A stretch of 64,000 bases of DNA, taken from IMG/VR virus record IMGVR_UViG_3300009093_000034, positions 186,001 to 250,000 of that record; one strand, written 5' to 3'. The position numbers and the translations under genes are program-made. Positions 10,386 to 60,313 of the stretch are shown here, one piece after another (position 1 is the stretch's first letter; each line of letters starts with the position of its first letter). The notes beneath the pieces are model-generated. The model had not been told where the DNA came from, searched no databases, and saw only the letters and a program-made list of their open reading frames with translations.

Positions 10386-10976
10386 ATGATGGGGTCTATC
10401 CATCTCATCTTAGGGCCGATGGCATCAGGCAAGAGCTCTGAGTTGCTTCGGCTATTAACTCGAGCATCCATCGCCAAGAAGAAACCAGTCATCTTGTTTA
10501 GAAGTCAAATGGACACAAGAGACTTCTTGACTAGAAACAAGACTGTGCTAGATCCTAGCATCCTTCAACTACAAGTTAAGGATAGTTTATTGGGCTATGT
10601 CTCAGAAAATTCTGAGTACTTGGTTAACAAGACCATAGGGATCGATGAAGGTCAGTTCTTCAAAGACCTAGCTATGGGTTGTCAGATCCTTACTAGTTTT
10701 GGTTCTGATGTTGTAGTCTCAGGACTAAACGGAACCTCAGAAAGAGGTGCTTTTTCAGAGATCTCTGAGTTGATCCCTTACGTTGAGACCATCACAAAAC
10801 TCAATGCGATCTGTTCTTGTTGTGGCTCTGAATATGGAGCCTTTACTCATTATAAAGGCGACAAGACCAAAGATACGGAGATTAAGGTTGGTGGAGATGA
10901 TCTCTACGAAGCCTTGTGCAGAGATTGTTATCACGAATCACTCATATCGGAGTCACTTCATGGAAAACAAGCCTAA
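10386..10976 (+). CDS. tdk: Thymidine kinase (type II, TK1-like)
   Basis: GPMASGKS P-loop, IDEGQF, CSCC...CRDC zinc site, VGGDDLYEALCR. Confidence 0.95.
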   Translation: MMGSIHLILGPMASGKSSELLRLLTRASIAKKKPVILFRSQMDTRDFLTRNKTVLDPSILQLQVKDSLLGYVSENSEYLVNKTIGIDEGQFFKDLAMGCQILTSFGSDVVVSGLNGTSERGAFSEISELIPYVETITKLNAICSCCGSEYGAFTHYKGDKTKDTEIKVGGDDLYEALCRDCYHESLISESLHGKQA

Positions 10977-19691: not shown

Positions 19692-20360
19692 ATGCCACGA
19701 AGGTCTGTGACCGAGACTCTAGACAGTCTTGAAAAGAAACTAGACAAATTACTAGAGACTGAGGTCTCAGATCTCGAATCAAAGGTCTTGAAAGGCGCTT
19801 GGAGAAAGAAGAAGCATGATGATCTTTCTTCAAACCTAAAAGACAATCATGGTTGGTTTAGCGTTGAAGACGTCATGTCTGCACCTGAAGACACCAAAAA
19901 AGGCATCGATTCTCTTATCAAGAAAGGTCTTTTGACCATCTTAACTGATGAAGAAAATTCAGATGACCATGAGTTCAAGCCCACTGAAAGAGGTCTTGAG
20001 GTCATGTACGACTTGTTTGACAAGTCTGGAAAATCCAATCGAGCTGGGGCTGGAAAGAAATTCCCAGTTAGAAAAGATCCAAAAGCTCCAGTCACCAAAG
20101 ATGACATTGCTAGAGTTGGAGAGTTTCTTCAAGAGTTTTATCCTGAGATTGATTGGGACTTTGAAGAAGGCCTTGGTCTTGGTCGCCGAGGTCCAAAGTT
20201 CGCCTTCATCTTTGTCAATGGTATCTCTCATAACAAAGACGAGATTCAAACCACAGCCAAGAGAATTGTTCTTGATTTCAAAGGTCAAGGTTTCTTAAAC
20301 ACCACTGAAGACATCAGTTTTGAGAATGGCTTTGCTGTGATTGAGTTGGAGGTGTGGTAA
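19692..20360 (+). CDS. Hypothetical protein, possible head internal protein
   Basis: AGGAG SD, ACTAATT upstream, N-terminal V-T-E/L-L-E sites. Confidence 0.55.
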   Translation: MPRRSVTETLDSLEKKLDKLLETEVSDLESKVLKGAWRKKKHDDLSSNLKDNHGWFSVEDVMSAPEDTKKGIDSLIKKGLLTILTDEENSDDHEFKPTERGLEVMYDLFDKSGKSNRAGAGKKFPVRKDPKAPVTKDDIARVGEFLQEFYPEIDWDFEEGLGLGRRGPKFAFIFVNGISHNKDEIQTTAKRIVLDFKGQGFLNTTEDISFENGFAVIELEVW

Positions 20361-21730
20361 TGAAGTTGACCAAGTTCATCCCATTAAGAGAAGACGATCA
20401 TACCATTCCTCATGAAGAGAACTTCTATGACTTGAACCCAGATCTTCAGATCGGTCCTAAGTTTGAAACTGGGGTTGATGAGTATTGTATTGAGTGTGGA
20501 GAACCTATGGATCCTCCAGACATCGATGAAAGTGGCAACCTGGTTTGTCCACATTGTGGCTTTGTAGAAGAGGATGACGTAGAAAGATGGCTTCGCTCTC
20601 GAACTGGCACTAATTACATAAGAGAGGCTATCAGAATGGCACGAGAACTAACCAAATTCATCTCGATTGACGAACAAGTCAGTCCTAACTACAAGATGGT
20701 GTCAGGAAAGAACCAAACTACACCACAAGGCAACGGAAGTGTTGCTACACCACTTAAGAAACAAGGATCCCCATCGGATCCAGCATCTTCCCCAGGTGGA
20801 CTTCCTAAGGGCGGAAAGCTCTCTGGAAAGTTTACCAACCACAGTGAGCTTAGTACTTACAACAGCAAGGAACCAATCACAGAGTCTACCAAGCTAGAAG
20901 AAACAACTCACGATGATTTTGTTGCCAACTATGGCGTTGAAATTAAGAGAGCTATTAAGAACTTGAAGTCTATCGGAAAGATCCTCAACGCTCTTCCTGA
21001 AGATTCTCCTTTCTTTGCTAAGTGGGAACAGGATCCTCATGATCCATTGAAACTAGCTGACCAAGTTATCGCTCAAGCTATTGAATCTTGGGCCGGGTCT
21101 GCTAATGACGTTTCAGTTGGAGAGATCGCAAGAGCAGCTGTTGCTAATCAAACTAGAAATGGAACTGAACCACAACAGGTTCTCTTCACCATTGAAGACC
21201 TTCTTAAGTACCTTGAGAGAAACACCAAGGGACTTGAGAAAGCCGTTGTTCATGAGTCCGTAGAAGTTTTGAACGAAAAAGAATCTCCTGAAAGCCATGG
21301 TCCTGGAGAAGATCCAGAGAAGCTTGCTGATGCTAGAGCATATGCTTATGCTAAGCTCGTTGACGACTTCGGTCTTAATGATGATGAAGCCTTTGAAGCT
21401 GTTGCATCAGCAGATGTTGGTCCATCAAGAGACCTTGATGACATGATTGATGCCATCGTTTGGGACGTAGTTGTCAACGACATCTCCCCATCCGACTTCT
21501 CTGAATCACAAAAGACACTTACAACCTTCAAACCTCTCAATGAGGATGGTGCCGCAGGCCGAACCACTGAGTATGCTACTGAGTCCAAGGAGATTGGAAA
21601 AGATTCTAAGACCCCTCTTCCAAAAGGTGGAGAGCTCTCTTCTGAGTTCAACAACGGAGAGAAGATTTCTCGTGGTCAAGAGATGATGCCAGAGAGTGGA
21701 AAGTTCACCAAGTTCACCCCTCTCAAATAA
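20360..21730 (+). CDS. Acidic modular protein with Zn-ribbon and repeated (L/F)TxFxx(L/I)xE motifs, putative head polyprotein
   Basis: CIEC...CPHC; four TKF/TTF motif copies; LPKGG.LS..F.N repeated twice. Confidence 0.6.
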   Translation: MKLTKFIPLREDDHTIPHEENFYDLNPDLQIGPKFETGVDEYCIECGEPMDPPDIDESGNLVCPHCGFVEEDDVERWLRSRTGTNYIREAIRMARELTKFISIDEQVSPNYKMVSGKNQTTPQGNGSVATPLKKQGSPSDPASSPGGLPKGGKLSGKFTNHSELSTYNSKEPITESTKLEETTHDDFVANYGVEIKRAIKNLKSIGKILNALPEDSPFFAKWEQDPHDPLKLADQVIAQAIESWAGSANDVSVGEIARAAVANQTRNGTEPQQVLFTIEDLLKYLERNTKGLEKAVVHESVEVLNEKESPESHGPGEDPEKLADARAYAYAKLVDDFGLNDDEAFEAVASADVGPSRDLDDMIDAIVWDVVVNDISPSDFSESQKTLTTFKPLNEDGAAGRTTEYATESKEIGKDSKTPLPKGGELSSEFNNGEKISRGQEMMPESGKFTKFTPLK

Positions 21731-21740
21731 GAAGGAAATA

Positions 21741-23471
21741 ATGGATTCTATTCTAAGAGAAGCTACTCTCCCCAAGTACGGTGTTTCGTTATCGCCAACT
21801 CGAGATCACGGTCAATTCATTGACTTTTTAGATACTCAATACAAGGTCCAAACAGCATCAGAATGGTTTAGAGATCCTGATCTAAAGAAATTAGAAGACA
21901 AAGTTAGGGATTGGTTTGTAGATAGAGAGATCACTTATGACATCTCTTCTATAAGAGGAACAAGAGACTTTTTGAAAACTTTATCCTTTCCAGACAATTG
22001 GGAAGATCTTCTAGACTCTTGTGATGTTTCAGTTATAACAGCTAAAGATTTACGATCAGCTATAGCTCTTGCTCGTAGTGAATCCTATGATGAGAGTACA
22101 AAAAAGACACTTACTCCCTTCAAAACTATGAACTCTTTCAAGTCTCTCCACGAAAATTGGACAGATGACTATGAAGATGGGGACATCGACGAACACTGTG
22201 TTGGTTGTGGTGCTCCTATTGATGATTACTTTGAAAGTGAGAACGGTGAGTTTGTTTGTCCTATTTGCGGTTTCAACGTAGGACCAAACGAAGAAGACCA
22301 AGAGTACTTTGACGAACTAGAAGTTCCAGGTGCCAGCATTGGTCGAGAACGTCCAGGTCTCTCAGACGAACAACAAGCTTACATTGATGCATGGGGTGAA
22401 CATGATCCAGATGACATCAACTTCGATGATTTTGAAGACTTCGAGTGGATGGAAGAATCAACACATCCCATCCTAAGAAAAAGATACTTTCAGGTTATGC
22501 TTGAACTAGATGCTCTCATGAGAACAGAAAAGACACCTCGAGTTCAGAAGCAAATTGAGATTCTTGAAAAAGAATTTGATGAACTAGAACGCGAGTTTGA
22601 TGCTGAACAACTTAAAGAAGCTTCAAGGAAGCCATTACCTTCGTGGGAAGAGCTTCAAGAAGTCTTAGATATCATCTCAAATGGAAAATGGTATCTTGTT
22701 GAAGATGATATCAAAAATTGGCCAAAGGTTCTTAAAGACAAAGTAGTCTCTCTAGCTGAGATGTTTGAGGAGATCTACAACATTAACTTTGGAGCTTCTG
22801 AATCTGGTGATCGTCGAAGACTTTCACTTGAGAATCAGATAGCTAGAAAGTGGGGATCGATCGAGAGACTAGTTAAGTCTCGTGTGTCTGAGTCTGCCCA
22901 ACAAAACATCCATGATGTAGAAAAGACTGAAGAACAACTTCACGTTGATATTGACATGGATGGAGAGAAGGGAGAATCTGCTGAACATCGAAAGAAGGTG
23001 TTAGGAGAGTCTAGAAGCGGATACCTTCTTAGCTTAACTCTTAAGTTCAAAAAAGGAGAAATTTCTATTTGGAAGGTTAGAGAAGCTCAAGCAGAAGCTG
23101 GGTGGACTGATACTAAATTGGAAACTTTTTGGAAAAAGTGGTCAAGTAAGATAGATCCTAAATCTGGATTTATTCGTACCCCAATCTTAGACGAATCCTG
23201 GTATAACAACTCAGAAGATCTTAATGAGATCAGTGAGATCCTTCAAATGCTTCCACCTGGTGAGATCAACAAGCTTAGAAAAGAACTAGATCTAGATGAT
23301 TGGGAGCTCTCTGTTTTGTCAGGACTTACAGTCAATAAACCTTTGGCTGAGAGTACCACACCTATTGTCCAGGACGACTCAGAAGCGTCTCCAGTTCAAG
23401 GCAATGGTGATGAGATAGGTGATTACTACAATGCTTACAAAGAAGCAGTTAAACTAGTAGATAGACTGTAA
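21741..23471 (+). CDS. Acidic modular protein with Zn-ribbon, putative head polyprotein (start re-assigned to 21741)
   Basis: AAGGA SD; CVGC...CPIC homologous to neighbour; many (L/I/V)-x-E-(S/A) sites. Confidence 0.6.
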   Translation: MDSILREATLPKYGVSLSPTRDHGQFIDFLDTQYKVQTASEWFRDPDLKKLEDKVRDWFVDREITYDISSIRGTRDFLKTLSFPDNWEDLLDSCDVSVITAKDLRSAIALARSESYDESTKKTLTPFKTMNSFKSLHENWTDDYEDGDIDEHCVGCGAPIDDYFESENGEFVCPICGFNVGPNEEDQEYFDELEVPGASIGRERPGLSDEQQAYIDAWGEHDPDDINFDDFEDFEWMEESTHPILRKRYFQVMLELDALMRTEKTPRVQKQIEILEKEFDELEREFDAEQLKEASRKPLPSWEELQEVLDIISNGKWYLVEDDIKNWPKVLKDKVVSLAEMFEEIYNINFGASESGDRRRLSLENQIARKWGSIERLVKSRVSESAQQNIHDVEKTEEQLHVDIDMDGEKGESAEHRKKVLGESRSGYLLSLTLKFKKGEISIWKVREAQAEAGWTDTKLETFWKKWSSKIDPKSGFIRTPILDESWYNNSEDLNEISEILQMLPPGEINKLRKELDLDDWELSVLSGLTVNKPLAESTTPIVQDDSEASPVQGNGDEIGDYYNAYKEAVKLVDRL

Positions 23472-23474
23472 ATT

Positions 23475-23504
23475 AAAAAGGTCCCTTTCGGGACCTTTTC
23501 TTTT
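23475..23504. terminator. Bidirectional rho-independent terminator
   Basis: AAAAGGTCCC-TTTC-GGGACCTTTT between convergent genes. Confidence 0.85.
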
Positions 23505-24462
23505 ACCTGTTCAACTTGACTGCCAACATTGCATCGATTGCTCTTCTAGCAGGCTCAATTAACTCTTCAGCCACAGTCACCTCAGGCAACTCGTTCTGAA
23601 GAGCAAGAAGAACCTTAGGAAGGGTGATCTTCTTCATGTGGGGACAAAGGTTACAGGGCCTGATGAACTCGGTGTCAGGGAAGTTGATGGCTACGTTGTC
23701 GGCCATCGAACACTCGGTGATTAACGCGATCTTCTCAGGCTTGTTCTTCTCCACATACTTGATCATCTGTGCCGTCGAACCAGCAAAGTCTGCAGCTTCA
23801 ACAACAGGAACAGGACATTCAGGGTGAGCGATGACCATCAGCTTCTTTCCATGCTGTTCACGAAGAGTCGTGATCTGTTCAGGAGTGAAGAGCTCATGGA
23901 CCATGCAGCTTCCGTTCCAAAGATGAAGTTTCTTCTTGGTCAGTTTCTGGATGTTTCTTCCAAGGTACTGGTCAGGGATGAAGATGATCTCGTCAGCATC
24001 CAAGCTCTCAACAACCTCGAGAGCGTTACCCGATGTGCAGCAAACATCCGTGACTGCCTTAACCGCAGCACTCGTGTTAACGTAGGTGACGACAGGAGCA
24101 CCAGGATGTTGTCTCTTCATCTCCAAAACGTCTTCAGCTGTGATGCCTTCACTGAGTGAACAACCAGCAGCCAAGTCAGCGATCAGAACCTTCTTGGTAG
24201 GGTTGAGGATCTTCACCGTCTCGGCCATGAAGTGAACACCACACATCACGATGATGTCAGCATCCGTGTTCACAGCTTCCTTTGCCAAAGCAAGAGAATC
24301 ACCAACGATGTCAGCGATCCCATGGAAGATGTCTGGGGTCATGTAGTTGTGGGCCAAGATAAGAGCGTTCTTCTCTTTCTTCAGCCGGTTGATCTCATCG
24401 ATGATGGGACCAATGATGGCCCACTCGACGTCGGGCACAAAGTTCTTAAGTTTGGGATTCAT
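23503..24462 (-). CDS. nadA: Quinolinate synthase NadA (start re-assigned to ATG 24462)
   Basis: ILAHNY, GDSL, CGVHFMAET, GCSL, TYVNTSA, CCTSGNA, GSCMVH, AHPEC, CPHMKK with three Fe-S cysteines; AGGA SD before MNPKL. Confidence 0.97.
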   Translation of the reverse strand: MNPKLKNFVPDVEWAIIGPIIDEINRLKKEKNALILAHNYMTPDIFHGIADIVGDSLALAKEAVNTDADIIVMCGVHFMAETVKILNPTKKVLIADLAAGCSLSEGITAEDVLEMKRQHPGAPVVTYVNTSAAVKAVTDVCCTSGNALEVVESLDADEIIFIPDQYLGRNIQKLTKKKLHLWNGSCMVHELFTPEQITTLREQHGKKLMVIAHPECPVPVVEAADFAGSTAQMIKYVEKNKPEKIALITECSMADNVAINFPDTEFIRPCNLCPHMKKITLPKVLLALQNELPEVTVAEELIEPARRAIDAMLAVKLNR

Positions 24463-24473
24463 GATGTCCTGCC

Positions 24474-24494
24474 TTATGCTCAATCTGAGCATAA
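24474..24494. promoter_or_regulatory. 21-bp inverted repeat matching the NadQ operator consensus
   Basis: TTATGCTCA-ATC-TGAGCATAA, between the -10 element and the nadA start; fits ttATRCTCannntGAGYATaa (consensus recalled from memory). Confidence 0.75.
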
Positions 24495-24509
24495 TTAGTA
24501 TTCATCAAT

Positions 24510-24518
24510 AATATCTCA
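24510..24518 (-). promoter_or_regulatory. TGAGATATT promoter motif for nadA
   Basis: AATATCTCA on + strand, upstream of the operator. Confidence 0.7.
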
Positions 24519-24547
24519 AAAAGAAAAAGCTCTGCCTAGGCAGAGCT
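24518..24547 (-). terminator. Terminator for the upstream paralog pair
   Basis: Perfect palindrome AGCTCTGCCTAGGCAGAGCT followed on the minus strand by TTTTCTTTT. Confidence 0.75.
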
Positions 24548-24584
24548 CTAACTTCTTCACAAACCTGCTATTTTTCGTACAGGT

Positions 24585-24971
24585 TTAGACAATGGCCATC
24601 TTGATGACTTTGTACTTAGCTGTCTCAAGTCGCTCAATCAATCTTTGATTAATTGCTGAAGCCAAAAGAGTATCAACAACGTTGTCAATCTCTGTATGCT
24701 TGTCATCATGACTAAAAGAACTAAAAGAATAAATTCTTTCTCCAGTGACATCAGGACATTCATTTTGAATTATGGCTTTCAGTTCCCATCTTTCAAAAAG
24801 AGTTCCTGTTCCAATTTTGTCACAGTCACTTTTGTTATGTTCATTCTTGTTGTAGATAACTTCCATACCATCCAACATAAGATTGAAGCACTTAGCTCCC
24901 TTCTCTGTGGCCTCGGAAACTCCTCTCCACCGACCAAGTTCAAACCGACCAAAAGCTGTTCGTGTAGCCAT
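24585..24971 (-). CDS. Hypothetical protein, paralog A of tandem pair
   Basis: RFELG..RGVS..T..GA.CFN and EIDNV..T.LASA...YKV shared with 25025-25348. Confidence 0.75.
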   Translation of the reverse strand: MATRTAFGRFELGRWRGVSEATEKGAKCFNLMLDGMEVIYNKNEHNKSDCDKIGTGTLFERWELKAIIQNECPDVTGERIYSFSSFSHDDKHTEIDNVVDTLLASAINQRLIERLETAKYKVIKMAIV

Positions 24972-25024: not shown

Positions 25025-25348
25025 TTAAACGTATTCCCAGTTTACCTTGTACATGCCTTCGAAAACTCTGTCGATGACCTTCTGTCGAACAGCAGAAGCA
25101 AGGATGGTTCCCATGACATTGTCAATCTCTCTGGACTTGTCTTCTCCAAAGAGGTAAGGACGTTCTCCGGTAATACCGTGTCCAAATTGTTCAATGTACG
25201 ATTTGAACTCTTGGCGAGAGAAGGTATCACTATCGATATCTTCAAGAAGATCTAAGAACTCATTAAAGCAACGAGCTCCTTCAATAGTTTCATCGCTTAC
25301 TCCTCTGTTTTTACCTAATTCAAAACGAGGAAAAGATTTTCGTGACAT
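25025..25348 (-). CDS. Hypothetical protein, paralog B of tandem pair
   Basis: See paralog A; own TGGATATT...AAGGAG leader. Confidence 0.75.
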   Translation of the reverse strand: MSRKSFPRFELGKNRGVSDETIEGARCFNEFLDLLEDIDSDTFSRQEFKSYIEQFGHGITGERPYLFGEDKSREIDNVMGTILASAVRQKVIDRVFEGMYKVNWEYV

Positions 25349-27784: not shown

Positions 27785-27875
27785 TTCTTTGTGTCGTCGT
27801 TGACGCACAAAGAAGAAAAAGACCTACAATGGTCAAAAATAAAACGATCCGTTTGTGATCAAAAAGGACATCATT
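27785..27875 (+). promoter_or_regulatory. Structured 5' leader of the SSB gene (three hairpins with A-rich linkers)
   Basis: 13-bp bulged stem 27785-27814, GACC/GGTC 27821-27834, GATC/GATC 27846-27860. Confidence 0.55.
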
Positions 27876-29171
27876 ATGTCAGATATTAATGAACTCGATG
27901 ACGAGTTTATGGCAGCAGCCGACGAGTATGCTCAAGAAGAGCAGAACAGAACTTCTCGTCGAGGAACTGGTGGAAACCAAGAGTACATTCCTCTTAAGTG
28001 GACTGGCTTGGTCACCAAACAACCCAAGATCATTCGCGTGTTAGGCGGTGTTCCTAACAAGCCAAACCCTCTCAACACAGACGCAAGACTTACTCAGGTA
28101 GCTCGAATCAAGGGCGATGACGGAAAGTATTTTAGGTGTATCCTTCCCCTTAAGGAAGAAGGTGCAGACCACGTTCTTTGGCGTATCATCAACCGAATCA
28201 ACGAGACCGCCTACGTCAACAGGAAGCGCATCTCTGTTAATGAGACCAAGCACAAGGAGATCTTCGATCTTGTCAACTACAACGGACTAGTTGAAGGTGA
28301 CAAGGGAAGGATGTACGAGCGTGGTTGGGAAGGTTCCAAGGTCATCGTCATGAACGTGATCGACCGTGAGCAGATGTCTTGGCACCGTGAGAACAAGCAC
28401 ACCATGCTTCTCTCTAAGAACATCAACAAGAATGGAGACCGAGAGTACGTCACAGAGGGAGTTCCTTCTTTTGGTTTCTACACCTTGATCGTTTCTAGTT
28501 TGTTCAAGAACTACGGTAGTTGGGAGAACTATGACATCCAGGTCATCAGAACTGGTAACACACAACCAGCTTACGAGGTACTTAATGCTTCTGCTTTCGT
28601 TAAGGGAAAGATCCCTCAGATCCTTCCAAGTCTTGTTCCTCTCGTTTCTCTTGAGGAGCATCTCACTGAAGAAGAGAAGAGCTGGGAACGCTATGACCTT
28701 TCTAAGCTTTACCACCCAACCAGCTACACCAAGATCTTCAACAAGTTGAAGGTTGCGGTCCAGAAGATCGATGCTCGCCTTAACACCAAGTTCTTTCAAG
28801 AGCTTGAGCACGAAGTAGAGAAGGAAAAGGCTGCTCGTGCAGCAGCTCAACCTCAGGAAGCAGGGCCTGCTTCTGAAGCTCCAGTCGTTGAAGAGGCTAA
28901 GCCAGCCGCAGCTCCTGCTGTTGCTTCTAGGCCGATCATCCGTGAAGGTACCAAGTATCATCTCTCTGCAGAGGAGATCTCTTCTCTCAAGGGATATGGA
29001 CTCTTGACCCCTGAACAAGCTTCTATCATCCGTGGTGTGAAGATCAAGAACGGAGAGGTTGCTGAGATCGATTTCGATACTCAAGAACCAATCGTTGCTT
29101 GTCCTTCTTGCCGAGTAGCAAGCCCTGAGTTCTTTGATAAGGGTTGTGTTGCTTGTGGTATTTCTTGGTAA
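27876..29171 (+). CDS. gp32-like single-stranded DNA-binding protein with C-terminal Zn-ribbon
   Basis: IIRVL, VMNVID, YDIQVIRTG...YEV, YDLSKLYHPTSY pattern; Ala/Pro linker; CPSC..CVAC; precedes loader and helicase. Confidence 0.65.
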   Translation: MSDINELDDEFMAAADEYAQEEQNRTSRRGTGGNQEYIPLKWTGLVTKQPKIIRVLGGVPNKPNPLNTDARLTQVARIKGDDGKYFRCILPLKEEGADHVLWRIINRINETAYVNRKRISVNETKHKEIFDLVNYNGLVEGDKGRMYERGWEGSKVIVMNVIDREQMSWHRENKHTMLLSKNINKNGDREYVTEGVPSFGFYTLIVSSLFKNYGSWENYDIQVIRTGNTQPAYEVLNASAFVKGKIPQILPSLVPLVSLEEHLTEEEKSWERYDLSKLYHPTSYTKIFNKLKVAVQKIDARLNTKFFQELEHEVEKEKAARAAAQPQEAGPASEAPVVEEAKPAAAPAVASRPIIREGTKYHLSAEEISSLKGYGLLTPEQASIIRGVKIKNGEVAEIDFDTQEPIVACPSCRVASPEFFDKGCVACGISW

Positions 29172-42431: not shown

Positions 42432-43418
42432 ATGGCAGTAACAATCATCATTGAAGGCCCGAATCTATCGGGAAAGAGTACCTTATCCAAGGCTCTGTCA
42501 GAACGACTTGGAATTCCAGTCGTCCACAACTCTAAGCCTGAAGACGGCTTCAGAGACAATCTCAAGTTCTCCATGGAGAACAAAGAGAACATCATTCTAG
42601 ATCGACACCACCTCGGAGAAGTCGTTTACCCTGCATTGAAGAGGGACGGACGACAGCCCCTTGAGCTATGGGAACAACATATGATCGAGAGAGTTCTTGA
42701 ATCCAAGGGAACGATCTTGATTCTTTGTAGTGCAGACCTTCAGTTTCGACTACAAAAGTTCGATGAGAGAGGTGAAGACTTTGTCACCAAGAATGAGCTT
42801 AAAGATGAAGGAGATCTCTTCGAAGATGCCTTCAATCGAAGCCTTCTCTCCAACAAGTTTGACTATCGTCTTCCTTTTACCGATGAAGATAAGACTGAAC
42901 GATTTCTTGATTTTATAGAAGAAAGATACAACTATCTTCTTGAAATCTCTGAAGAGTTTGAAGAGTATGAACACCAAGGTTATCTTCCTTCAGATCCTTA
43001 CTCTGAGCCCACGGCAGTTATTATCGGAGATAGCTATGGTGACAAAACATCTGTTGGATCTGGAACAAAGAGAGCTTTTGTATCTCCTATTGGATCAAGC
43101 AGACACCTTGCTCAAGCTCTAGCTATGATTCATCGTCCAACAGATAAACTTTACATCACCAATGCTTGGAAGTACATTGATAACAGAGAAGTAAGTCGTC
43201 AAACTCTTGTTGAAGAACTTTATTTTGTTGGAGCTTCCAAATGTCCTATTATTGTTCTTGGTTATGAAGCCAAGAAAGCTTTGGATGGAATCAATACAGA
43301 TGGTCTCTTTTCCCATTATACTTTTGTAAACCATCCTCAGTTTGAGTTTAGGTTCAAGAACAAAGAGATCGGGAGATACGCTAAGGCTCTCGACATTGCA
43401 TTGGGAGTCAACAGGTGA
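42432..43418 (+). CDS. dNMP kinase fused to a uracil-DNA-glycosylase-like domain
   Basis: IEGPNLSGKST, ILDRHH.GE.VY; C-terminal IIGD...YITNA...IVLG..A...NHPQ UDG-superfamily pattern. Confidence 0.75.
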   Translation: MAVTIIIEGPNLSGKSTLSKALSERLGIPVVHNSKPEDGFRDNLKFSMENKENIILDRHHLGEVVYPALKRDGRQPLELWEQHMIERVLESKGTILILCSADLQFRLQKFDERGEDFVTKNELKDEGDLFEDAFNRSLLSNKFDYRLPFTDEDKTERFLDFIEERYNYLLEISEEFEEYEHQGYLPSDPYSEPTAVIIGDSYGDKTSVGSGTKRAFVSPIGSSRHLAQALAMIHRPTDKLYITNAWKYIDNREVSRQTLVEELYFVGASKCPIIVLGYEAKKALDGINTDGLFSHYTFVNHPQFEFRFKNKEIGRYAKALDIALGVNR

Positions 43419-44713
43419 GTCAACAAAACAACAACGGAGTAGCCCAGTCTTTATTCATGGCTCTCAAGTATCTATACGATGAAGGAAAGTTTGTTCCGGA
43501 TAAGACAGGAGTCAAGACTGTTGAGATCGTCAACGGAAGTATCTCTCTAGATCCGCAGTTTCCTTACTTAGACCTGGGAATTTTCAAGGCCAAGGAAGAA
43601 TACATCAAAAAAGAACTTGAGTGGTATCTCTCTCAAAAGTTAAACATCCATCCTATAATGGATGATGTAAAGATTTGGAATGAAGTCTGTGGTAGAAATG
43701 GAGAGATCAACTCCAACTATGGTTGGGCAGTTTTTAGTCCAGAAAACTGGGATCAATTTGGGTATGTTCTCAGTTGCTTAAAGAAAGATAAGTGGTCTCG
43801 TAGAGCTGTTATGCAATACAACAGACCTGTCATGGTAGTAGACTATAACAGAGATGGAATGTCTGATTATCTTTGTACTCTTTCTGTTCAAGTGTTGATC
43901 AGAGATAGCAAACTTTACTACATCGTCACTCAACGATCTTGTGATTTTAGAACAGGTCTTCCTAACGACTTTGCTTGGCACGCTTGGGTTTACAAGTCTC
44001 TTTTCAACTTGTTGAAAGAGGAGTATCCAGATCTTGAATATTCAGAAGATGGTATCCAAATGAACTTTGGGTCTGTTCATCTCTACGAGAGAAATTTTGG
44101 ACTCTTCCAAAAGTGGGAAGAATATCTTCAAGAACAGTCTAAGATCGAACAAGATAAGTTAACAAACTCGATAGCCATTGTTCCTAGAAAAAAGTGGTAT
44201 CCCGCTATGTACTTCACAAAGGTACGAGACGTTCAAAGTCCATTGAGAGCCCATGATACCGATGCGGGTATGGACTTCTATGTTCCTAAATTCTCCGATG
44301 ATTTCATCAGAGACTTTGAAGTAAAGAATCCCAAGATCAAAGTGATCGACAAGATCAACATTGAACTTAAGCCTCATGAAAGAGTCTTGATCCCAAGTGG
44401 AATCAAGGCACACGTTCCTGAGAACCACATGCTCATGACCGAGAACAAATCTGGTGTCGCTTCTAAGCTAGGACTTGACGTTATGGCTAAGATCGTTGAC
44501 GAACCTTACAATGGAGAGATACATCTTTCATTGGCCAACACTTCCAACGAAACCGTACTGATTACAGAAGGACAGAAGTTGGTTCAGTTGATCGCTGTTC
44601 CGGTTTCTTATGTTGTCCCTACAGAGATCACAAACGAAGAGTACCAAAGCCTTCCTCGATGGCAAGAAACTTCCAGAGGTGAAGGTGGGTTTGGCTCAAC
44701 AGGAACAAAGTAA
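43415..44713 (+). CDS. dCMP hydroxymethylase-like (T4 gp42/thymidylate synthase family) fused to trimeric dUTPase
   Basis: GEINSNYGW, RRAVMQYNRP, DGMSDYLCT, QRSCD...GLPND (Asp at the specificity site), GSVHLYER; C-terminal AGMDF, NKSG, VDEPYNGEI, RGEGGFGSTG. Confidence 0.85.
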   Translation: MSQQNNNGVAQSLFMALKYLYDEGKFVPDKTGVKTVEIVNGSISLDPQFPYLDLGIFKAKEEYIKKELEWYLSQKLNIHPIMDDVKIWNEVCGRNGEINSNYGWAVFSPENWDQFGYVLSCLKKDKWSRRAVMQYNRPVMVVDYNRDGMSDYLCTLSVQVLIRDSKLYYIVTQRSCDFRTGLPNDFAWHAWVYKSLFNLLKEEYPDLEYSEDGIQMNFGSVHLYERNFGLFQKWEEYLQEQSKIEQDKLTNSIAIVPRKKWYPAMYFTKVRDVQSPLRAHDTDAGMDFYVPKFSDDFIRDFEVKNPKIKVIDKINIELKPHERVLIPSGIKAHVPENHMLMTENKSGVASKLGLDVMAKIVDEPYNGEIHLSLANTSNETVLITEGQKLVQLIAVPVSYVVPTEITNEEYQSLPRWQETSRGEGGFGSTGTK

Positions 44714-45102
44714 TGGTATTGACACTGCCTCATGGCGAGTTAACCTATGGATGGAAAACACCTAGAGAGCTTAGACTAGAAGAAGATGATGAAAACTATC
44801 TTCCTCCAGGAATTGAGAAAATCCTTGAGTTAGATGAGTTGTTAGTTGATGACGCGTTTAGAAATAAAGGAATAGGAGGTCTACTTGTAAAGTGGTTTTT
44901 TGCTACTCCTGAAGCAGAAGAAGCTGATGCCTTCTTTCTCGATGTCTCTCCTTCTTATCTAGAAGATGAAGGACTAACGGAAGCTGAAGCTGAGCTTTAC
45001 TTGAGACACTTTTACTCTAAGTTTGGTTTTAAGTCTAAGACTCCACACTCAAGAATGTGGGTCTTTAAGAAACCTCTTCCTATTGAGGACTATCCTTTAT
45101 GA
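44713..45102 (+). CDS. GNAT acetyltransferase
   Basis: LLVDDAFRNKGIGGLL and L..FYSKFGF motifs. Confidence 0.85.
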   Translation: MVLTLPHGELTYGWKTPRELRLEEDDENYLPPGIEKILELDELLVDDAFRNKGIGGLLVKWFFATPEAEEADAFFLDVSPSYLEDEGLTEAEAELYLRHFYSKFGFKSKTPHSRMWVFKKPLPIEDYPL

Positions 45103-45560
45103 GCGAGTTTCTAAATGACCTCTTCTTCATGAAGTGGGCAGAAGACGTTTCAGAAGCTTCCACATGTGCCAAGATCAAGGTCGGGTCTGTCATCACCAAG
45201 AACAAAAGAGTCGTTTCTCTTGGTTACAATGGCGTCCCTTCTGGAGTCGACCATTGTTGTAATCACTTCTCTGGAGATCTTTCTAGAGAAGTCTTAGGGG
45301 AAGATGAGTTCTTGAAACTCCACTCTGAGTTCTCAAATAACTTTGAACTTCATGCTGAGTCTAACGCCATCATTGATGCCTTGAACAGACAACAAGATCT
45401 TACAGGTACCACGTTATACTGTACTTACTCTCCTTGTTCTCACTGTAGCAAGTTGATCATTCAAACAGGGATCAAGAGAGTTGTCTTCAAAAAGTTCTAC
45501 TCAGTCGAGCCTGTTCAATGGCTTAGCCAATTCATATCTGTAACTCACCTTCCAGACTAA
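45099..45560 (+). CDS. dCMP deaminase
   Basis: STC...VG.VI, GYNG.P.G, HAESNAI, SPCSHCSKLI. Confidence 0.93.
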   Translation: MSEFLNDLFFMKWAEDVSEASTCAKIKVGSVITKNKRVVSLGYNGVPSGVDHCCNHFSGDLSREVLGEDEFLKLHSEFSNNFELHAESNAIIDALNRQQDLTGTTLYCTYSPCSHCSKLIIQTGIKRVVFKKFYSVEPVQWLSQFISVTHLPD

Positions 45561-50831: not shown

Positions 50832-51905
50832 GTGGATAAGGAATTCACACTAGCAGTTTTTATCTGCCGGGCTCAGCCTTTTCATAAGGCTCATTACGCT
50901 GCTCTTCTCCATGCAGCAAAATATGCTACTCGTTTACTCATCCTAGTAGGAAGTGCAACTAGTGGTCGTAGCACAAGAAATTCTTGGACATATGAAGAAC
51001 GCGTTCGCTTCATTAAAGAATACATCATGTCTAAGGATGAGAGACTCGATTACTCTCACAAGATCGAAATCCGCCCTATCGCAGATAGTGCCTATGATTT
51101 CCATGATTGGCTATTCAGAGCCAAGAAAATCATCCAAGAAACCCAATTCGTAGATCTCCCTCAGGGACAACACAAGATAGCCATCATCCGTCACTACAAA
51201 GACGACACGAGCTACTATCTCAACTACTTCCCAGAATACCAGACCATAGAAACTCCCACGTACGATGATGGGTTTGGAGCTACACAGATCCGTGAAGCTT
51301 ACTTTAGCATAGAGTATGGCGTTGACGGATTTATGTCAAGAATAGCTCTTGAAAAAGAATATCCTTATCTTAAGACGTGGCGAGAAGCCAACAAAGAAAT
51401 TTTCCTCCAACTTCAGCGAGAGTTCGCCTTTGTCAAGGCTTACAAGAAGAGCTGGGAAGGAACTCCCTATCCTGTCAACTTCAGTACCTGCGATGCAGTC
51501 TGTGTCTGCTTGGGTCATGTTCTCTTGATCAAGAGAGGAAGGAATCCTGGAAAAGACCAGCTAGCTTTGCCTGGTGGTTTTTTGAACTTGGATGAGACCT
51601 TTCAGCAAGGCGCTATTCGTGAGCTCCGTGAAGAAACTCACATTGGCCTTTCTGTTCAAACTCTAGAAACTACCATCGCCAATCAACACATCTTCGACCA
51701 TCCTCTTCGTGATCCTCGTGGTCGTTTCATCACCAATGCTTTTCTCTTTGACCTTAAGAAAGAAAAGAGTCTTCCTGAGATAAAAGCAGACGATGATGCT
51801 TCGGAAGCCCTTTGGCTTCCTCTTCAGGATCTTGAGAAGAGAGAAAATGAATTTTTCGCTGACCACGCTCAGATCATCAAGTGGTTCAGGAACAGGATGC
51901 GCTAA
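50832..51905 (+). CDS. Bifunctional NMN/NaMN adenylyltransferase - Nudix ADP-ribose pyrophosphatase (NadM-Nudix)
   Basis: RAQPFHKAH, VGSA, GATQIR; Nudix box GGF...ET....A.RELREET, RDPRGR, ADDDA. Confidence 0.93.
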   Translation: MDKEFTLAVFICRAQPFHKAHYAALLHAAKYATRLLILVGSATSGRSTRNSWTYEERVRFIKEYIMSKDERLDYSHKIEIRPIADSAYDFHDWLFRAKKIIQETQFVDLPQGQHKIAIIRHYKDDTSYYLNYFPEYQTIETPTYDDGFGATQIREAYFSIEYGVDGFMSRIALEKEYPYLKTWREANKEIFLQLQREFAFVKAYKKSWEGTPYPVNFSTCDAVCVCLGHVLLIKRGRNPGKDQLALPGGFLNLDETFQQGAIRELREETHIGLSVQTLETTIANQHIFDHPLRDPRGRFITNAFLFDLKKEKSLPEIKADDDASEALWLPLQDLEKRENEFFADHAQIIKWFRNRMR

Positions 51906-52210: not shown

Positions 52211-53014
52211 ATGATTCGCACAGCACTCGTAATCATCGATCCTCAGAACGACTTCGTTTTGACCGATCAAGATGGTGCTGCTCTTCCTGTTCCAGGAGCT
52301 AAGGCAGACATGGACCGCCTCAGCGACTTTATCAGGAAGAACATCACCAAGTTCAATGAGATTCAGGTCACCCTGGACTCTCACCACCAGTTCCAGATCT
52401 TCCATCCTATGTATTGGACGGATGGAAAGGGTAAGCAGCCGAAGCCTTTCGATAGGATCACGGCCGACGACATTGAGAAGGGAGTTTGGACCACCAAGGT
52501 TCCTTCCCACCGTCAGAGAGCTCTTGAGTACGTCAAGGCTCTGGAGACCGGAGGACGTTATGTCCTCATCATCTGGCCTTACCACTGTCTGATCGGCAGT
52601 TGGGGCGGACAGATCTACGAGCCTCTCTTCAAGACCCTTCTTGATTGGGAGACCACCAACATCGGTATGTTCGGAAAGGTGACCAAGGGTTCCAATCTGT
52701 TCACCGAGCACTACTCGGCTGTCAAGGCTGAAGTTCCGGATCCTCAGGATCCCACAACTCAGTTGAACCAGGACTTCATCGACATTCTGGCAAACCCGGA
52801 CATCGATCAGGTTCTCGTCGCTGGTGAAGCTTTGGACTTCTGTCTTTACAACTCGGCTCTCGACGTGGCCAACGCCCTTGGTGTTGATCAGGCCAAGAAG
52901 ATCAAGGTTCTTGAGGACTGCACAAGTCCCATCTACCCTGATGCTGTGGCTCGTGTCAAGGCAGATCTCGGAGCCAAGGGTGTTCAGTTCATCACCACGG
53001 CTACCGCGTTCTAA
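52211..53014 (+). CDS. pncA: Nicotinamidase (isochorismatase family)
   Basis: IIDPQNDF, LPVPGA, TLDSH, WPYHC, KG, GEALDFC. Confidence 0.9.
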   Translation: MIRTALVIIDPQNDFVLTDQDGAALPVPGAKADMDRLSDFIRKNITKFNEIQVTLDSHHQFQIFHPMYWTDGKGKQPKPFDRITADDIEKGVWTTKVPSHRQRALEYVKALETGGRYVLIIWPYHCLIGSWGGQIYEPLFKTLLDWETTNIGMFGKVTKGSNLFTEHYSAVKAEVPDPQDPTTQLNQDFIDILANPDIDQVLVAGEALDFCLYNSALDVANALGVDQAKKIKVLEDCTSPIYPDAVARVKADLGAKGVQFITTATAF

Positions 53015-58292: not shown

Positions 58293-59146
58293 AAGTGCTT
58301 AAGTACAACGTCAATGACCGGGTGGTCATCAAGTCTTTAGAAGAAATTCAAAAGTGTGAAGAGTACTCTAATGCTAATGCAGCTGGAGAAGAAGTAGAAA
58401 GATTCATATCCGACATGGAACCATTTTGTGGTTGTGTGTTAACTATTTCATCAAAAGGATTTGAATCAGATCAAGCTCCATCCTACTCTGTTTTAGAACC
58501 TGGAGCAAGTAGATGGCATTGGCAAGATTGGATGATCTCCCGTCTTGCTGAACATGTTGAACCAGACAAACCTTGGCCTAGGATCAAGACCATGATCATT
58601 GACCAAGGTAGAGACGACCAAGATCATCTTCGTCAAGATGAAGGAGTCTATCGTATTCGATACGATATTTCCTACATCGCTATCGCTCCTTCCAAAGACG
58701 GAGCCATCTTGATTGGAAGCCCCGTTCACATTGAAAGTTCAGGTGATGGTGAGTACACTCTATGGGGTATCATGAGGGTGGGAACAAGACATCCTTACCC
58801 TGTCAATGACGTCCGTCACTTTAACAGTCACTCGGATTTGAAAAAAGCTCTGGAAGGCGTCGAGGTCATCCTTGACAAGGCCTACGCAAGAAAGAAAATT
58901 GACCTTCTCCAAGCAGAGATCACGAAGCTAGAGGAAGACTACAAGCTCTACTCTATCGGAGACGATACTAGAGAAGGTCTTTTTGCTGGATATATCTCAA
59001 GTGCTGAAGAACTCTCTAAGTTCCCAGGAATAGAGAACAGTTGGATCGAAGCCTCAATCTCTTTCAAAGGCGGAGTCAATGGTCTGAGAGATGTCAAGAT
59101 CGGAGATCGTTTCAAGTTCTGGGACAAGGCATGGCATCCACTATGA
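58289..59146 (+). CDS. Hypothetical protein
   Basis: KYNVNDRVVIKS...M..FCG...TI N-terminal phage domain. Confidence 0.6.
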   Translation: MKVLKYNVNDRVVIKSLEEIQKCEEYSNANAAGEEVERFISDMEPFCGCVLTISSKGFESDQAPSYSVLEPGASRWHWQDWMISRLAEHVEPDKPWPRIKTMIIDQGRDDQDHLRQDEGVYRIRYDISYIAIAPSKDGAILIGSPVHIESSGDGEYTLWGIMRVGTRHPYPVNDVRHFNSHSDLKKALEGVEVILDKAYARKKIDLLQAEITKLEEDYKLYSIGDDTREGLFAGYISSAEELSKFPGIENSWIEASISFKGGVNGLRDVKIGDRFKFWDKAWHPL

Positions 59147-60028: not shown

Positions 60029-60313
60029 ATGGAACAAACTTGCGATACTTGTTTCTTTTGTAGGGACATAATTGTAGGATCCAGTTGTTTTGGAAGATGG
60101 CCAGCTAGAGAGATCACAAGTTGTATTGTAGGTCGTGAAGGCGATCGTTTTCCAAAACCTGTTCCCGTTTCTAAATCAAACACTTGTCACAAGTGGGCTT
60201 CCAAGAACGAAAAATTCAAGATTCAAAAATTGCTAGATGGTAGAGGAATTTGGACACCAGCAGAAAAATGGGTCCCACCTTATAATCCAGAGAGGTCTAA
60301 GTACTATGACTAA
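60029..60313 (+). CDS. Cys-rich small protein
   Basis: CDTC.FC...C...C.KW. Confidence 0.55.
   Translation: MEQTCDTCFFCRDIIVGSSCFGRWPAREITSCIVGREGDRFPKPVPVSKSNTCHKWASKNEKFKIQKLLDGRGIWTPAEKWVPPYNPERSKYYD

What the first reader, a model, noticed from the sequence alone, without database searches (positions are those of the whole stretch)
23503..24518. Phage nadA retains a perfect NadQ-type operator between a phage promoter and its start codon
Seen: 21-bp inverted repeat TTATGCTCA-ATC-TGAGCATAA (24474-24494), 15 nt downstream of the genome-wide TGAGATATT promoter motif and 11 nt upstream of the re-assigned ATG. Known (recalled from memory): NadQ, the Nudix-like regulator of de novo NAD genes in alpha/beta-proteobacteria, binds ttATRCTCannntGAGYATaa. 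The N-terminus (VPDVEW...INRLKKEKNALILAHNY) resembles the alphaproteobacterial NadA type. Inference: the phage gene is wired to the host NAD/ATP sensor and is de-repressed when NAD falls, for example during NADase-based defence, or replicating genomes titrate NadQ and switch on host nadABC. It is also a clue to the host or gene donor.
Basis: partly seen in the sequence, partly recalled or inferred. Interest (0 to 1): 0.8.

Follow-up and report, generated by a model that had tools for sequence, protein, structure and literature searches.

The report
Phage nadA kept its host's NadQ operator
A giant soil phage took the NAD-synthesis gene nadA from a spirochete together with the binding site of the host's NAD-sensing repressor NadQ and has kept that site in perfect form, so the viral gene is probably switched by the host's own NAD sensor.

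Summary
A perfect 9+3+9 palindrome, TTATGCTCA-N3-TGAGCATAA, lies at 24474-24494. It is 15 nt after a TGAGATATT promoter motif and 11 nt before the nadA ATG at 24462. It matches all 18 specified positions of the published NadQ consensus. It also scores above all 78 bacterial NadQ-type sites collected here.

The closest NadA proteins (80-87% identity) are not alphaproteobacterial. They come from uncultured, about 62% GC, soil Spirochaetota. These bacteria encode a true NadQ and carry two tandem NadQ boxes before nadA.

The phage box, ribosome-binding site and start codon align without gaps to donor box 2, RBS and ATG. So the operator arrived with the gene.

Since then:
- fourfold-degenerate sites have reached 25% identity, which is saturation;
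- the phage NadA branch is 5-20 times longer than its sisters';
- box 1 has decayed into the phage's own promoter motif;
- 16-17 N-terminal codons were lost.

Box 2 nevertheless keeps 15-16 of 18 arm positions, and its two changes both move toward consensus. That argues for selection.

NadQ binding, and a host that has NadQ, remain untested. No sister phage was found. The phage encodes no NadQ, but it does carry NadM-Nudix and a PncA-like gene. This is a new member of a known kind, a phage metabolic gene under a host regulator.

The parts
23476..23499 (.). G+C-rich hairpin with T/A runs on both sides. It lies between the convergent genes 21696-23471 (+) and nadA (-) and is probably a bidirectional terminator closing the nadA cassette.
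   Evidence: Terminator scan; sequence
23503..24462 (-). nadA, quinolinate synthase, 319 aa including the stop codon, start ATG at 24462. It is intact and lacks the 16-17 N-terminal residues of its closest bacterial relatives.
   Evidence: Pfam NadA 2.7e-113 over 2-294 of 295 positions. NCBIfam NadA 372 bits against a cut-off of 294. Matches T. maritima NadA 4P3X at 1.1e-68, with cysteines at the three positions I recall from memory as its Fe-S ligands. N-terminal alignment.
24463..24473 (-). Leader GGCAGGACATC holding the ribosome-binding site. It is homologous to the donors' GGGAGGTCCC.
   Evidence: 5 of 6 identical to four of the five donor sequences (3 of 6 to L098), in the same register
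24474..24494 (.). NadQ-type operator TTATGCTCA-GAT-TGAGCATAA. It is a perfect palindrome and the positional homologue of donor box 2.
   Evidence: 18 of 18 consensus positions. 31.7 bits, above all 78 bacterial sites. Arms 15-16 of 18 identical to donors, spacer 0-1 of 3.
24495..24516 (-). Decayed remnant of donor box 1, with 8 mismatches to the NadQ consensus. It now overlaps the phage promoter motif.
   Evidence: 10-12 of 22 identical to donor box 1 without gaps. Permutation p = 0.016, and 0.55% of window 22-mers reach that identity.
24510..24518 (-). TGAGATATT, the phage's recurrent promoter-like motif, of extended -10 type (TG-n-GATATT). Its GATATT aligns with the donors' -10 hexamer TATACT.
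   Evidence: 9 copies against 0.87 expected. All lie upstream of start codons. Register with donors.
24526..24549 (-). Intrinsic-terminator-like hairpin plus T-run ending the upstream gene (24585-24971). This makes nadA a unit of its own.
   Evidence: Terminator scan
50832..51905 (+). Bifunctional NMN adenylyltransferase / Nudix (NadM-Nudix type), a second NAD-metabolism gene of the phage. It has no NadQ box upstream.
   Evidence: Pfam CTP_transf_like + NUDIX. NCBIfam 5.8e-86, below its curated cut-off. Atlas clusters of the same name, many viral.
52211..53014 (+). Isochorismatase-fold protein, possibly a nicotinamidase (PncA-like). The assignment is weak.
   Evidence: Pfam Isochorismatase 9.3e-09. 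NCBIfam nicotinamidase/pyrazinamidase 4.3e-07, far below its cut-off.

Best explanation
**What it is (shown).** The palindrome is a NadQ operator. It entered the phage together with nadA from a NadQ-bearing soil spirochete. What was transferred ran from the donor's -10 region through both NadQ boxes and the RBS into the coding sequence.

**What happened in the phage (shown).**
- The -10/box 1 part was remodelled into the phage's own TGAGATATT promoter.
- The region upstream of it was replaced by the neighbour gene's terminator.
- 16-17 N-terminal codons were lost.
- Box 2 was kept and sharpened to a perfect consensus palindrome.

**How it most likely works (inferred).**
- The promoter can be read as an extended -10. 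Transcription would then start a few nt after GATATT, and the box would lie at about +9 to +29.
- It can also be read as TTGAGA-17 nt-AATTAT. The box would then overlap the -10 hexamer.
- Either way a bound repressor would block RNA polymerase.
- In a host that makes NadQ, phage nadA would be held off while the NAD/ATP state keeps NadQ on DNA. It would be released when NAD falls, for example through viral demand or NAD-degrading defence.
- The phage would then add the oxygen-sensitive Fe-S step, quinolinate synthase, to the host's de novo pathway.
- The phage's NadM-Nudix and PncA-like genes would act further down NAD metabolism.
For: **The site is a NadQ-type site**
- It matches 18 of 18 positions of the published consensus.
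- It scores above all 78 bacterial sites collected here.
- In those bacterial loci, 78 of 79 sites lie within 260 nt upstream of nadA.
- A box is present in 35 of 37 loci that hold nadQ and in 15 of 46 that do not (Fisher p = 3.5e-9).

**It is homologous to the donors' operator**
- The closest NadA proteins sit on bacterial contigs with the gene order gatCAB-nadQ-...-nadA-nadB.
- Their regulator matches the solved 'NADQ transcription factor' 7Q91 over both domains (7.6e-70).
- They carry two boxes 1 nt apart, followed by GGGAGG and ATG. The phage box, RBS and ATG align to these without gaps.

**Direction and age of the transfer**
- Phage NadA nests in the donor subclade (support 99/93). Its terminal branch is 0.28, against 0.01-0.06 for its sisters.
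- Fourfold-degenerate sites are 25% identical to the donors.
- GC3 has dropped from 0.76-0.83 in the donors to 0.60 in the phage gene.

**Signature of constraint**
- Box arms are 15-16 of 18 identical and the spacer 0-1 of 3. The box 1 region is 10-12 of 22 identical, and DNA further upstream 5-8 of 40.
- The chance of at least 16 of 18 identical is 2e-8 at a per-site identity of 0.25, and 1.4e-4 at 0.45.
- Both phage-specific changes in the arms (C1 to T, A16 to G) move toward the consensus.

**Promoter geometry**
- The nadA leader is about 20 nt longer than those behind the other eight TGAGATATT copies. That is the length of the box.

**No phage-specific explanation**
- This is the only strict box in the 305-kb contig.
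- No NadQ homologue was found in the window or in IMG/VR.
Against: - No binding or expression data exist.
- The host is unknown. Phage G+C is 43.6%, against about 62% in the donors. The donor clade therefore need not be the present host, and the present host might lack nadQ.
- No related phage carrying this nadA was found, so conservation within the phage lineage could not be tested directly.
- The only variant seen, in run X4, does not cover the box.
- Part of the divergence could have arisen in an unsampled bacterial intermediate. The box could then be younger in the phage than the long branch suggests.
- If this jumbo phage shields its DNA from host proteins, NadQ could not reach the site. 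This was not examined.
- That the contig is a phage rests on its IMG/VR label and its gene content. No structural genes were recognised in this window.
Confidence: 0.6

Rival explanations
1. Decoy or titration. NadQ does bind, but the main effect is that many replicating phage genomes, each with one very strong site, soak up the scarce repressor. This would de-repress the host's nadAB, and with it phage nadA. It is compatible with the best explanation and differs only in which effect matters.
For: The site is stronger than any of the 78 bacterial sites (31.7 bits against a maximum of 31.6 and a median of 25.6). Only 3 of 78 bacterial sites have perfectly complementary arms. Both phage-specific changes strengthen the site. 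The phage lacks nadB, so phage NadA depends on the host enzyme (NadB) that makes its substrate.
Against: There is only one site per 305-kb genome, whereas a dedicated sponge would be expected to carry several. The site sits exactly where a repressor controls nadA itself. NadQ copy number and phage genome copy number are unknown.
Confidence: 0.12
2. Inert passenger. The box came in with the gene and has simply not decayed yet. It has no role in the phage, for example because the present host has no NadQ.
For: Homology with the donor operator alone explains why the box is there. No sister phage is available to show conservation. The G+C gap between phage and donors leaves the host open.
Against: Neutral sites in the same gene are saturated (25% identity at fourfold sites). 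The adjacent box 1 and the DNA further upstream have decayed or been replaced. The spacer has changed while the arms have not. The two arm changes go toward consensus rather than away from it.
Confidence: 0.15
3. RNA element. The palindrome acts as a 9-bp hairpin in the 5' leader of the nadA mRNA, protecting the transcript or tuning translation, independently of NadQ.
For: The leader folds with the 9-bp stem at -14.6 kcal/mol, z = -2.9. Perfect arm complementarity is rare among bacterial NadQ sites (3 of 78), so it could have been selected for pairing.
Against: The sequence, not merely the pairing, matches the NadQ consensus at every position. The homologous donor boxes are imperfect palindromes conserved in sequence. 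The stem does not cover the RBS. None of the other eight TGAGATATT leaders carries such a hairpin.
Confidence: 0.07
4. Operator of a phage-encoded regulator that happens to resemble a NadQ site, or a phage-encoded NadQ-like protein.
For: Jumbo phages encode many unknown proteins. Most ORFs of the window have no family match.
Against: No NadQ or winged-helix NrtR-type homologue is in the window (tblastn) or in IMG/VR by pattern scan. This is the only such site in the 305-kb contig. Homology to the donor operator already explains the sequence.
Confidence: 0.03

Closest known systems
NadQ (COG4111) regulon operators upstream of nadABC in bacteria (Leyn et al. 2016, PMC5343134; NadQ structure 7Q91)
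   Same: Same 21-bp palindrome consensus, and the same place between promoter and nadA start. The phage site is directly homologous to the promoter-proximal box of its closest bacterial relatives.
   Different: It lies in a viral genome that has no nadQ of its own. It has one box instead of the donors' two. It sits behind a phage-type promoter motif. It is a stronger match than any bacterial site collected here.
Cyanophage metabolic genes under the host PhoBR system (pstS in P-SSM2; S-PM2d genes with Pho boxes, PMC10976474)
   Same: A phage-borne gene of host origin keeps or gains a binding site for a host nutrient-sensing regulator. Its expression then follows the host's physiological state.
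   Different: PhoB is an activator of a two-component system responding to phosphate. NadQ is a repressor responding to adenine and pyridine nucleotides. The cyanophage cases have binding and expression data. This one has none.
Phage NAD reconstitution pathways NARP1 and NARP2 (bioRxiv 10.1101/2024.02.11.579819) and KVP40 NadV/NatV salvage
   Same: Phage-encoded NAD supply, thought to offset NAD loss during infection or defence. This phage also carries an Nmnat-Nudix gene like the NARP2/KVP40 adenylyltransferase.
   Different: Those pathways rebuild NAD from nicotinamide and ADPR or PRPP. The NARP paper does not mention de novo synthesis, NadA or quinolinate. No Nampt was found in this window. 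No host-sensor control is described for NARP. The paper notes that NARP2 overproduces NAD at a cost, which is the kind of cost a repressor site would limit.
Marine low-G+C viral contigs with Pelagibacterales-type nadA (L002-L015)
   Same: Viral contigs that carry nadA alone, without nadB.
   Different: Only about 55% identical. They were acquired from a different bacterial lineage. They have no NadQ box, as in the Pelagibacterales loci themselves.

Membership tests
NadQ-binding operator (NadQ regulon site) | 21-bp palindrome fitting ttATRCTCannntGAGYATaa | tested here: met
   18 of 18 specified positions. 31.7 of a possible 33.1 bits on a matrix of 78 bacterial sites.
NadQ-binding operator (NadQ regulon site) | Lies in the promoter or leader of an NAD biosynthesis gene | tested here: met
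   15 nt after the promoter motif and 11 nt before the nadA ATG
NadQ-binding operator (NadQ regulon site) | Positional homology with sites before orthologous genes in related genomes | tested here: met
   Ungapped register with donor box 2, RBS and ATG; arms 15-16 of 18 identical
NadQ-binding operator (NadQ regulon site) | The cell in which it acts encodes NadQ | tested here: inconclusive
   The phage has none. The donor clade has one near nadAB. The actual host is unknown.
NadQ-binding operator (NadQ regulon site) | Bound by NadQ protein, with binding modulated by ATP/NAD | not testable with these tools
   Needs a gel-shift or footprint experiment. The ATP/NAD response of NadQ is known to me only from the title and from memory of Minazzato et al. 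2022, which is not held in the library.
   No NrtR matrices were available. The only Nudix protein seen is NadM-Nudix, which has no winged-helix domain.
Quinolinate synthase NadA | Full-length match above curated thresholds | tested here: met
   Pfam 378 bits against a cut-off of 27. NCBIfam NF006878 372 bits against 294.
Quinolinate synthase NadA | Three cysteine ligands of the 4Fe-4S cluster | tested here: met
   Cysteines stand at the three positions that I recall, from memory, as the cluster ligands of T. maritima NadA 4P3X. All cysteines invariant in 25 relatives are present in the phage protein.
Phage metabolic gene controlled by a host regulator (PhoB/pstS type) | Expression of the phage gene depends on the host regulator and its signal | not testable with these tools
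   No RNA data. The runs found are DNA only.
NARP2 (Nampt + Nmnat) | Both Nampt and Nmnat encoded by the phage | tested here: inconclusive
   Nmnat-Nudix is present. No Nampt/NAPRTase domain was found among the 59 window ORFs scanned against Pfam or NCBIfam. The other 240 kb of the genome were not seen.

The most novel reading that the evidence does not exclude
The phage has turned the host's NAD-sensing repressor into a trigger for regulated counter-defence. A single super-consensus NadQ box keeps phage nadA silent in healthy cells. When NAD-degrading immunity or viral demand drains NAD, NadQ lets go. Titration by the many copies of the phage genome helps, and both phage nadA and host nadAB come on. 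NAD is then rebuilt de novo rather than by the known salvage-type reconstitution pathways.
Probability: 0.2. Interest if true: 0.8.

Novelty: new member of a known kind. Interest (0 to 1): 0.6.

Why it matters
Phage-encoded NAD supply is currently understood as salvage-type rebuilding (NARP1, NARP2, NadV/NatV). These pathways are expressed without known control, and NARP2 is reported to overproduce NAD at a cost.

This case adds two things:
- a de novo step, quinolinate synthase, carried by a virus;
- sequence evidence that it stays coupled to the host's own NAD sensor.

It is also a clear example of how a transferred gene is domesticated. One operator was recycled into a viral promoter while the other was sharpened.

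It gives a concrete host lead for an otherwise orphan 305-kb soil phage: NadQ-bearing soil Spirochaetota, a group from which, to my knowledge, few phages have been described.

The claim is directly testable with one protein, one 21-mer and a reporter.

Tried and rejected
**Searches for a sister phage, to test conservation of the box**
- IMG/VR by NadA returned only this contig, plus marine contigs about 55% identical without a box.
- The 5.8-billion protein set holds no other N-terminally short copy above 87% identity.
- The JGI metagenome pattern scan for motif plus box returned only the source contig and one chance hit inside a coding region.
- Laying public runs gave identical pieces (X2, X3). 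One about 95% variant (X4) covers only 23431-23693, not the box.

**Other dead ends**
- GenBank phages have no DNA match. Only 9 records hold a distant NadA at 31-39% identity, mostly fragmentary or unannotated records.
- A phage-encoded NadQ was not found: none in the window by tblastn, and none in IMG/VR by pattern scan.
It returned nothing closer than 63%, so the donor species could not be named from it.
- Cluster look-up gave no names.

**Donor taxon.** It was inferred instead from GatB, NadA and NadQ neighbours, whose nearest named relatives are Spirochaetota (all named hits for GatB).

**Other strict NadQ-like palindromes in IMG/VR.** There are 111 stretches. None besides this phage lies near nadA, nadB or nadQ. 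I take them as mostly chance, but I did not check them against other NAD genes.

**Rejected readings**
- An alphaproteobacterial origin of the gene.
- The start codon at 24492.

**Could not be read.** The NadQ structure paper is not in the library.
Full report
**1. Observation**

On the minus strand the region reads: terminator hairpin, T-run, TGAGATATT, 15 nt, TTATGCTCA-GAT-TGAGCATAA, GGCAGGACATC, ATG.
- The palindrome is at 24474-24494.
- At up to three mismatches the pattern occurs twice in 64 kb, against 0.03 expected. The second hit is a weak one inside a gene.
- TGAGATATT occurs nine times against 0.87 expected. Every copy faces a start codon.
- The other eight copies lie 9-28 nt from their start codon. 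The nadA copy lies 47 nt away. The nadA leader is therefore longer by about the length of the box.
- Hairpins followed by T-runs flank the gene on both sides. nadA is thus a one-gene unit with its own promoter and terminators.

**2. The gene**

The ORF is a complete quinolinate synthase.
- Pfam NadA scores 2.7e-113 over the whole model. NCBIfam is above its curated cut-off.
- It matches T. maritima NadA 4P3X at 1.1e-68. Cysteines stand at the three positions that, from memory, ligate its Fe-S cluster.
- nadA is rare in deposited phage genomes. Only nine records match, at 31-39% identity, and most are fragmentary or unannotated.
- The window belongs to a 305,833-bp IMG/VR contig from a rhizosphere metagenome. 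Identical pieces occur in two other soil or rhizosphere runs.
- Most ORFs of the window have no family. Those that do are typical of large phages: DnaB, a thymidylate synthase-dUTPase fusion, thymidine kinase, dCMP deaminase, RNA ligase, an SbcC-like ATPase and a lytic transglycosylase.

**3. Is the motif really the NadQ motif?**

- Sites with at most three mismatches number 79. Of these, 78 lie within 260 nt upstream of nadA, which is 1.4% of the DNA searched.
- A box is present in 35 of 37 loci that hold nadQ within 10 kb, and in 15 of 46 that do not (Fisher p = 3.5e-9).
- On a matrix built from these 78 sites the phage site scores 31.7 bits out of a possible 33.1. That is above every bacterial site (maximum 31.6, median 25.6). 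Only 3 of 78 bacterial sites have perfectly complementary arms.
- The matrix was built from sites chosen by similarity to the consensus, so it is partly circular. It ranks sites; it does not prove binding.

**4. Where the gene came from**

- The closest proteins (80-87% identity, 324-335 aa for correctly called starts) are metagenomic. They sit on plainly bacterial contigs with the conserved order gatCAB, a 332-350 aa regulator, tauE, tilS, a hypothetical gene, nadA, nadB, msrB, ftsJ.
- The regulator matches the solved 'NADQ transcription factor' 7Q91 over both domains (7.6e-70).
- The nearest named relatives of the clade's GatB (all named hits), NadA and NadQ are Spirochaetota. The donors are therefore uncultured soil spirochetes of about 62% G+C. 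They are not alphaproteobacteria, whose NadA is about 55-60% identical.
- In a maximum-likelihood tree the phage protein nests inside one donor subclade (support 99/93). Its terminal branch is 0.28, against 0.01-0.06 for its sisters. The transfer therefore went from bacterium to phage and was followed by much change.
- Fourfold-degenerate sites are 25% identical to the donors, which is saturation. GC3 has fallen from 0.76-0.83 in the donors to 0.60. The other phage genes measured have GC3 mostly near 0.40 (range 0.27-0.55).

**5. The operator came with the gene**

All donors share one layout: TTGACT, 18 nt, CATTAT; box 1 (TTATACTCA-N3-TGAACATAA) starting inside that -10; one nucleotide; box 2 (yTmTGCTCA-N3-TGAnnATAA); GGGAGG (GGGGGC in L098/L099); four or five nucleotides; ATG. 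I anchored the comparison on box 2 and allowed no gaps.

| Segment | Identity, phage vs donors |
|---|---|
| Box 2 arms | 15-16 of 18 |
| Box 2 spacer | 0-1 of 3 |
| 6 nt after the box (RBS) | 5 of 6 (3 of 6 for L098) |
| 22 nt of box 1 | 10-12 of 22 (permutation p = 0.016) |
| Next 40 nt upstream | 5-8 of 40 |

- The homologous tract therefore begins at about the donor's -10 hexamer.
- In this register the donor's TATACT aligns with the GATATT of the phage motif.
- The former box 1 now has eight mismatches to the NadQ consensus and holds the phage promoter motif.
- Box 2 differs from the sister bacteria at two arm positions (C1 to T, A16 to G). Both changes move toward the consensus and make the palindrome perfect.
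- The phage ATG at 24462 aligns with the donors' ATG. The phage then lacks 16-17 codons that are variable among the relatives anyway.
- The ATG at 24492 lies inside the box and has no RBS. Several database gene calls in the donors make the same upstream mis-call through the boxes.

**6. Is it still in use?**

The argument is indirect.
- The gene's neutral sites are saturated, and neighbouring non-coding DNA has decayed or been replaced.
- If the box evolved neutrally, the chance of keeping at least 16 of 18 arm positions is 2e-8 at a per-site identity of 0.25, and 1.4e-4 at 0.45.
- The pattern is what a protein-binding site under selection shows: arms kept, spacer changed, changes toward consensus.

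Three caveats apply.
- The per-site rate in the leader is not known.
- Part of the long branch could belong to an unsampled bacterial intermediate.
- No second phage with this nadA exists in IMG/VR, in the JGI metagenomes or in the protein set. The direct test, conservation among diverged phages, could not be run. A roughly 95% variant in another soil run covers only the 3' end of the gene.

**7. Mechanism**

- The phage encodes no NadQ. None is in the window, none was found in IMG/VR by pattern scan, and there is no other strict box in its 305 kb. Any binding protein must therefore be the host's.
- If TGAGATATT is an extended -10, as its closeness to the RBS in the other eight copies requires, the box lies at about +9 to +29.
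- The sigma-70 scan also finds TTGAGA-17 nt-AATTAT, whose -10 overlaps the left arm of the box.
- In both readings a bound repressor blocks initiation or promoter escape.
- NadQ is listed among repressors of NAD synthesis genes. Its ATP/NAD response I know only from the title of, and from memory of, a paper that the library does not hold.
- The likely logic is that nadA stays silent when NAD is sufficient and is released when NAD falls.
- The phage also carries NadM-Nudix (50832-51905) and a weak PncA-like gene (52211-53014). Neither has a box upstream.
- The window has no nadB. Phage NadA therefore depends on host NadB and on the rest of the host's de novo pathway.

**8. Rivals**

- **Decoy.** A strong site on many genome copies soaks up NadQ. 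This fits the unusual strength of the site, but there is only one site per genome.
- **Inert passenger.** This is disfavoured by section 6 but not excluded.
- **RNA hairpin.** The fold is -14.6 kcal/mol with z = -2.9. It would explain the perfect pairing. It would not explain why every base fits the NadQ consensus or why the donor homologues are imperfect palindromes.
- **Phage-specific regulator.** Nothing supports it.

**9. Comparison and novelty**

- Host regulators controlling phage-borne metabolic or toxin genes are known. Cyanophage pstS and other cyanophage genes under PhoBR have binding data.
- Phage NAD supply is also known, as NARP1, NARP2 and KVP40 NadV/NatV. Those are salvage-type pathways. 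The NARP paper does not mention de novo synthesis, NadA or quinolinate.
- I found no paper that links quinolinate synthase with phage auxiliary metabolic genes.
- This case is a new member of a known kind. It has an unusually clear evolutionary record and a link to the NAD arms race.

**10. Verdict**

- The identification as a retained NadQ operator is strongly supported.
- The donor is corrected to soil Spirochaetota.
- Regulation by host NadQ is the best explanation (0.6) but is untested.

Noticed in passing
window 50832-51905 (+) and 52211-53014 (+): The phage carries more NAD-metabolism genes about 26-28 kb from nadA. One is a bifunctional NMN adenylyltransferase/Nudix (NadM-Nudix type). 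The other is an isochorismatase-fold protein that weakly resembles nicotinamidase. Neither has a NadQ-like site upstream, and no Nampt was seen in the window.
   Followed up: partly
L002-L015 (IMG/VR contigs, about 30% G+C): A second, unrelated set of viral contigs carries nadA alone. Only the gene itself resembles Pelagibacterales nadA (about 55% identity to the window's protein). The flanks of the one contig examined (L011) hit phage protein families. There is no NadQ box, as in the Pelagibacterales loci. nadA thus seems to have entered viruses at least twice.
   Followed up: partly
L019, L027, L031, L034-L036, L038, L046, L068, L084, L085 (nadA loci of named genomes): nadQ next to nadA, with NadQ-type boxes upstream, occurs in Spirochaetaceae, Acidobacteriota, Actinomycetota and Gammaproteobacteria. 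This is wider than the alpha/beta/gamma-proteobacterial range described in the 2008 and 2016 papers.
   Followed up: partly
window 24585-24971 (-) and 25025-25348 (-): Two small paralogous proteins of unknown function lie just upstream of nadA. They share an N-terminus of the form ..FxRFELGxxRGVSxxTxxGAxCFN. The nearer one is preceded by a TGAGATATT motif. Neither matches a Pfam family.
   Followed up: no
window 20354-21730 (+) and 21696-23471 (+): Two adjacent large acidic proteins each carry a similar zinc-ribbon-like stretch (CxxCG...(E/D)(N/S)G(E/N)(F/L)VCPxCGF). They are probably paralogues. Neither has a family match.
   Followed up: no
window 59041-60027 (+) and 60237-61988 (+): A PP2C-type phosphatase lies next to a protein with a Ser/Thr kinase domain. 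This looks like a kinase/phosphatase pair in a phage genome.
   Followed up: no
window 8878, 25008, 33709, 39495, 41659, 48713, 49249, 62452 (motif starts): TGAGATATT, usually followed by (g/a)ta, sits 9-28 nt before start codons. It is too close to the RBS to be a -35 element. It behaves like an extended -10-only promoter of this phage. It is not known which polymerase or sigma factor reads it.
   Followed up: partly
window 23431-23693, run X4: A soil metagenome from another study holds a variant of the nadA 3' end. It has 12 differences in 263 nt. The 11 that are listed all lie in the coding part at steps of three, which fits synonymous change. A diverged relative of the phage therefore exists, but only as a short contig.
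   Followed up: partly
window 43415-44713 (+), 45099-45560 (+), 10386-10976 (+), 42432-43418 (+): A nucleotide-metabolism set: a thymidylate synthase fused to dUTPase, dCMP deaminase, thymidine kinase and a weak thymidylate-kinase-like protein.
   Followed up: no
window 27926-27946: The second-best NadQ-matrix hit (GTATGCTCAAGAAGAGCAGAA, 14.8 bits, 3 mismatches) lies inside the ORF 27855-29171. I take it as chance.
   Followed up: partly
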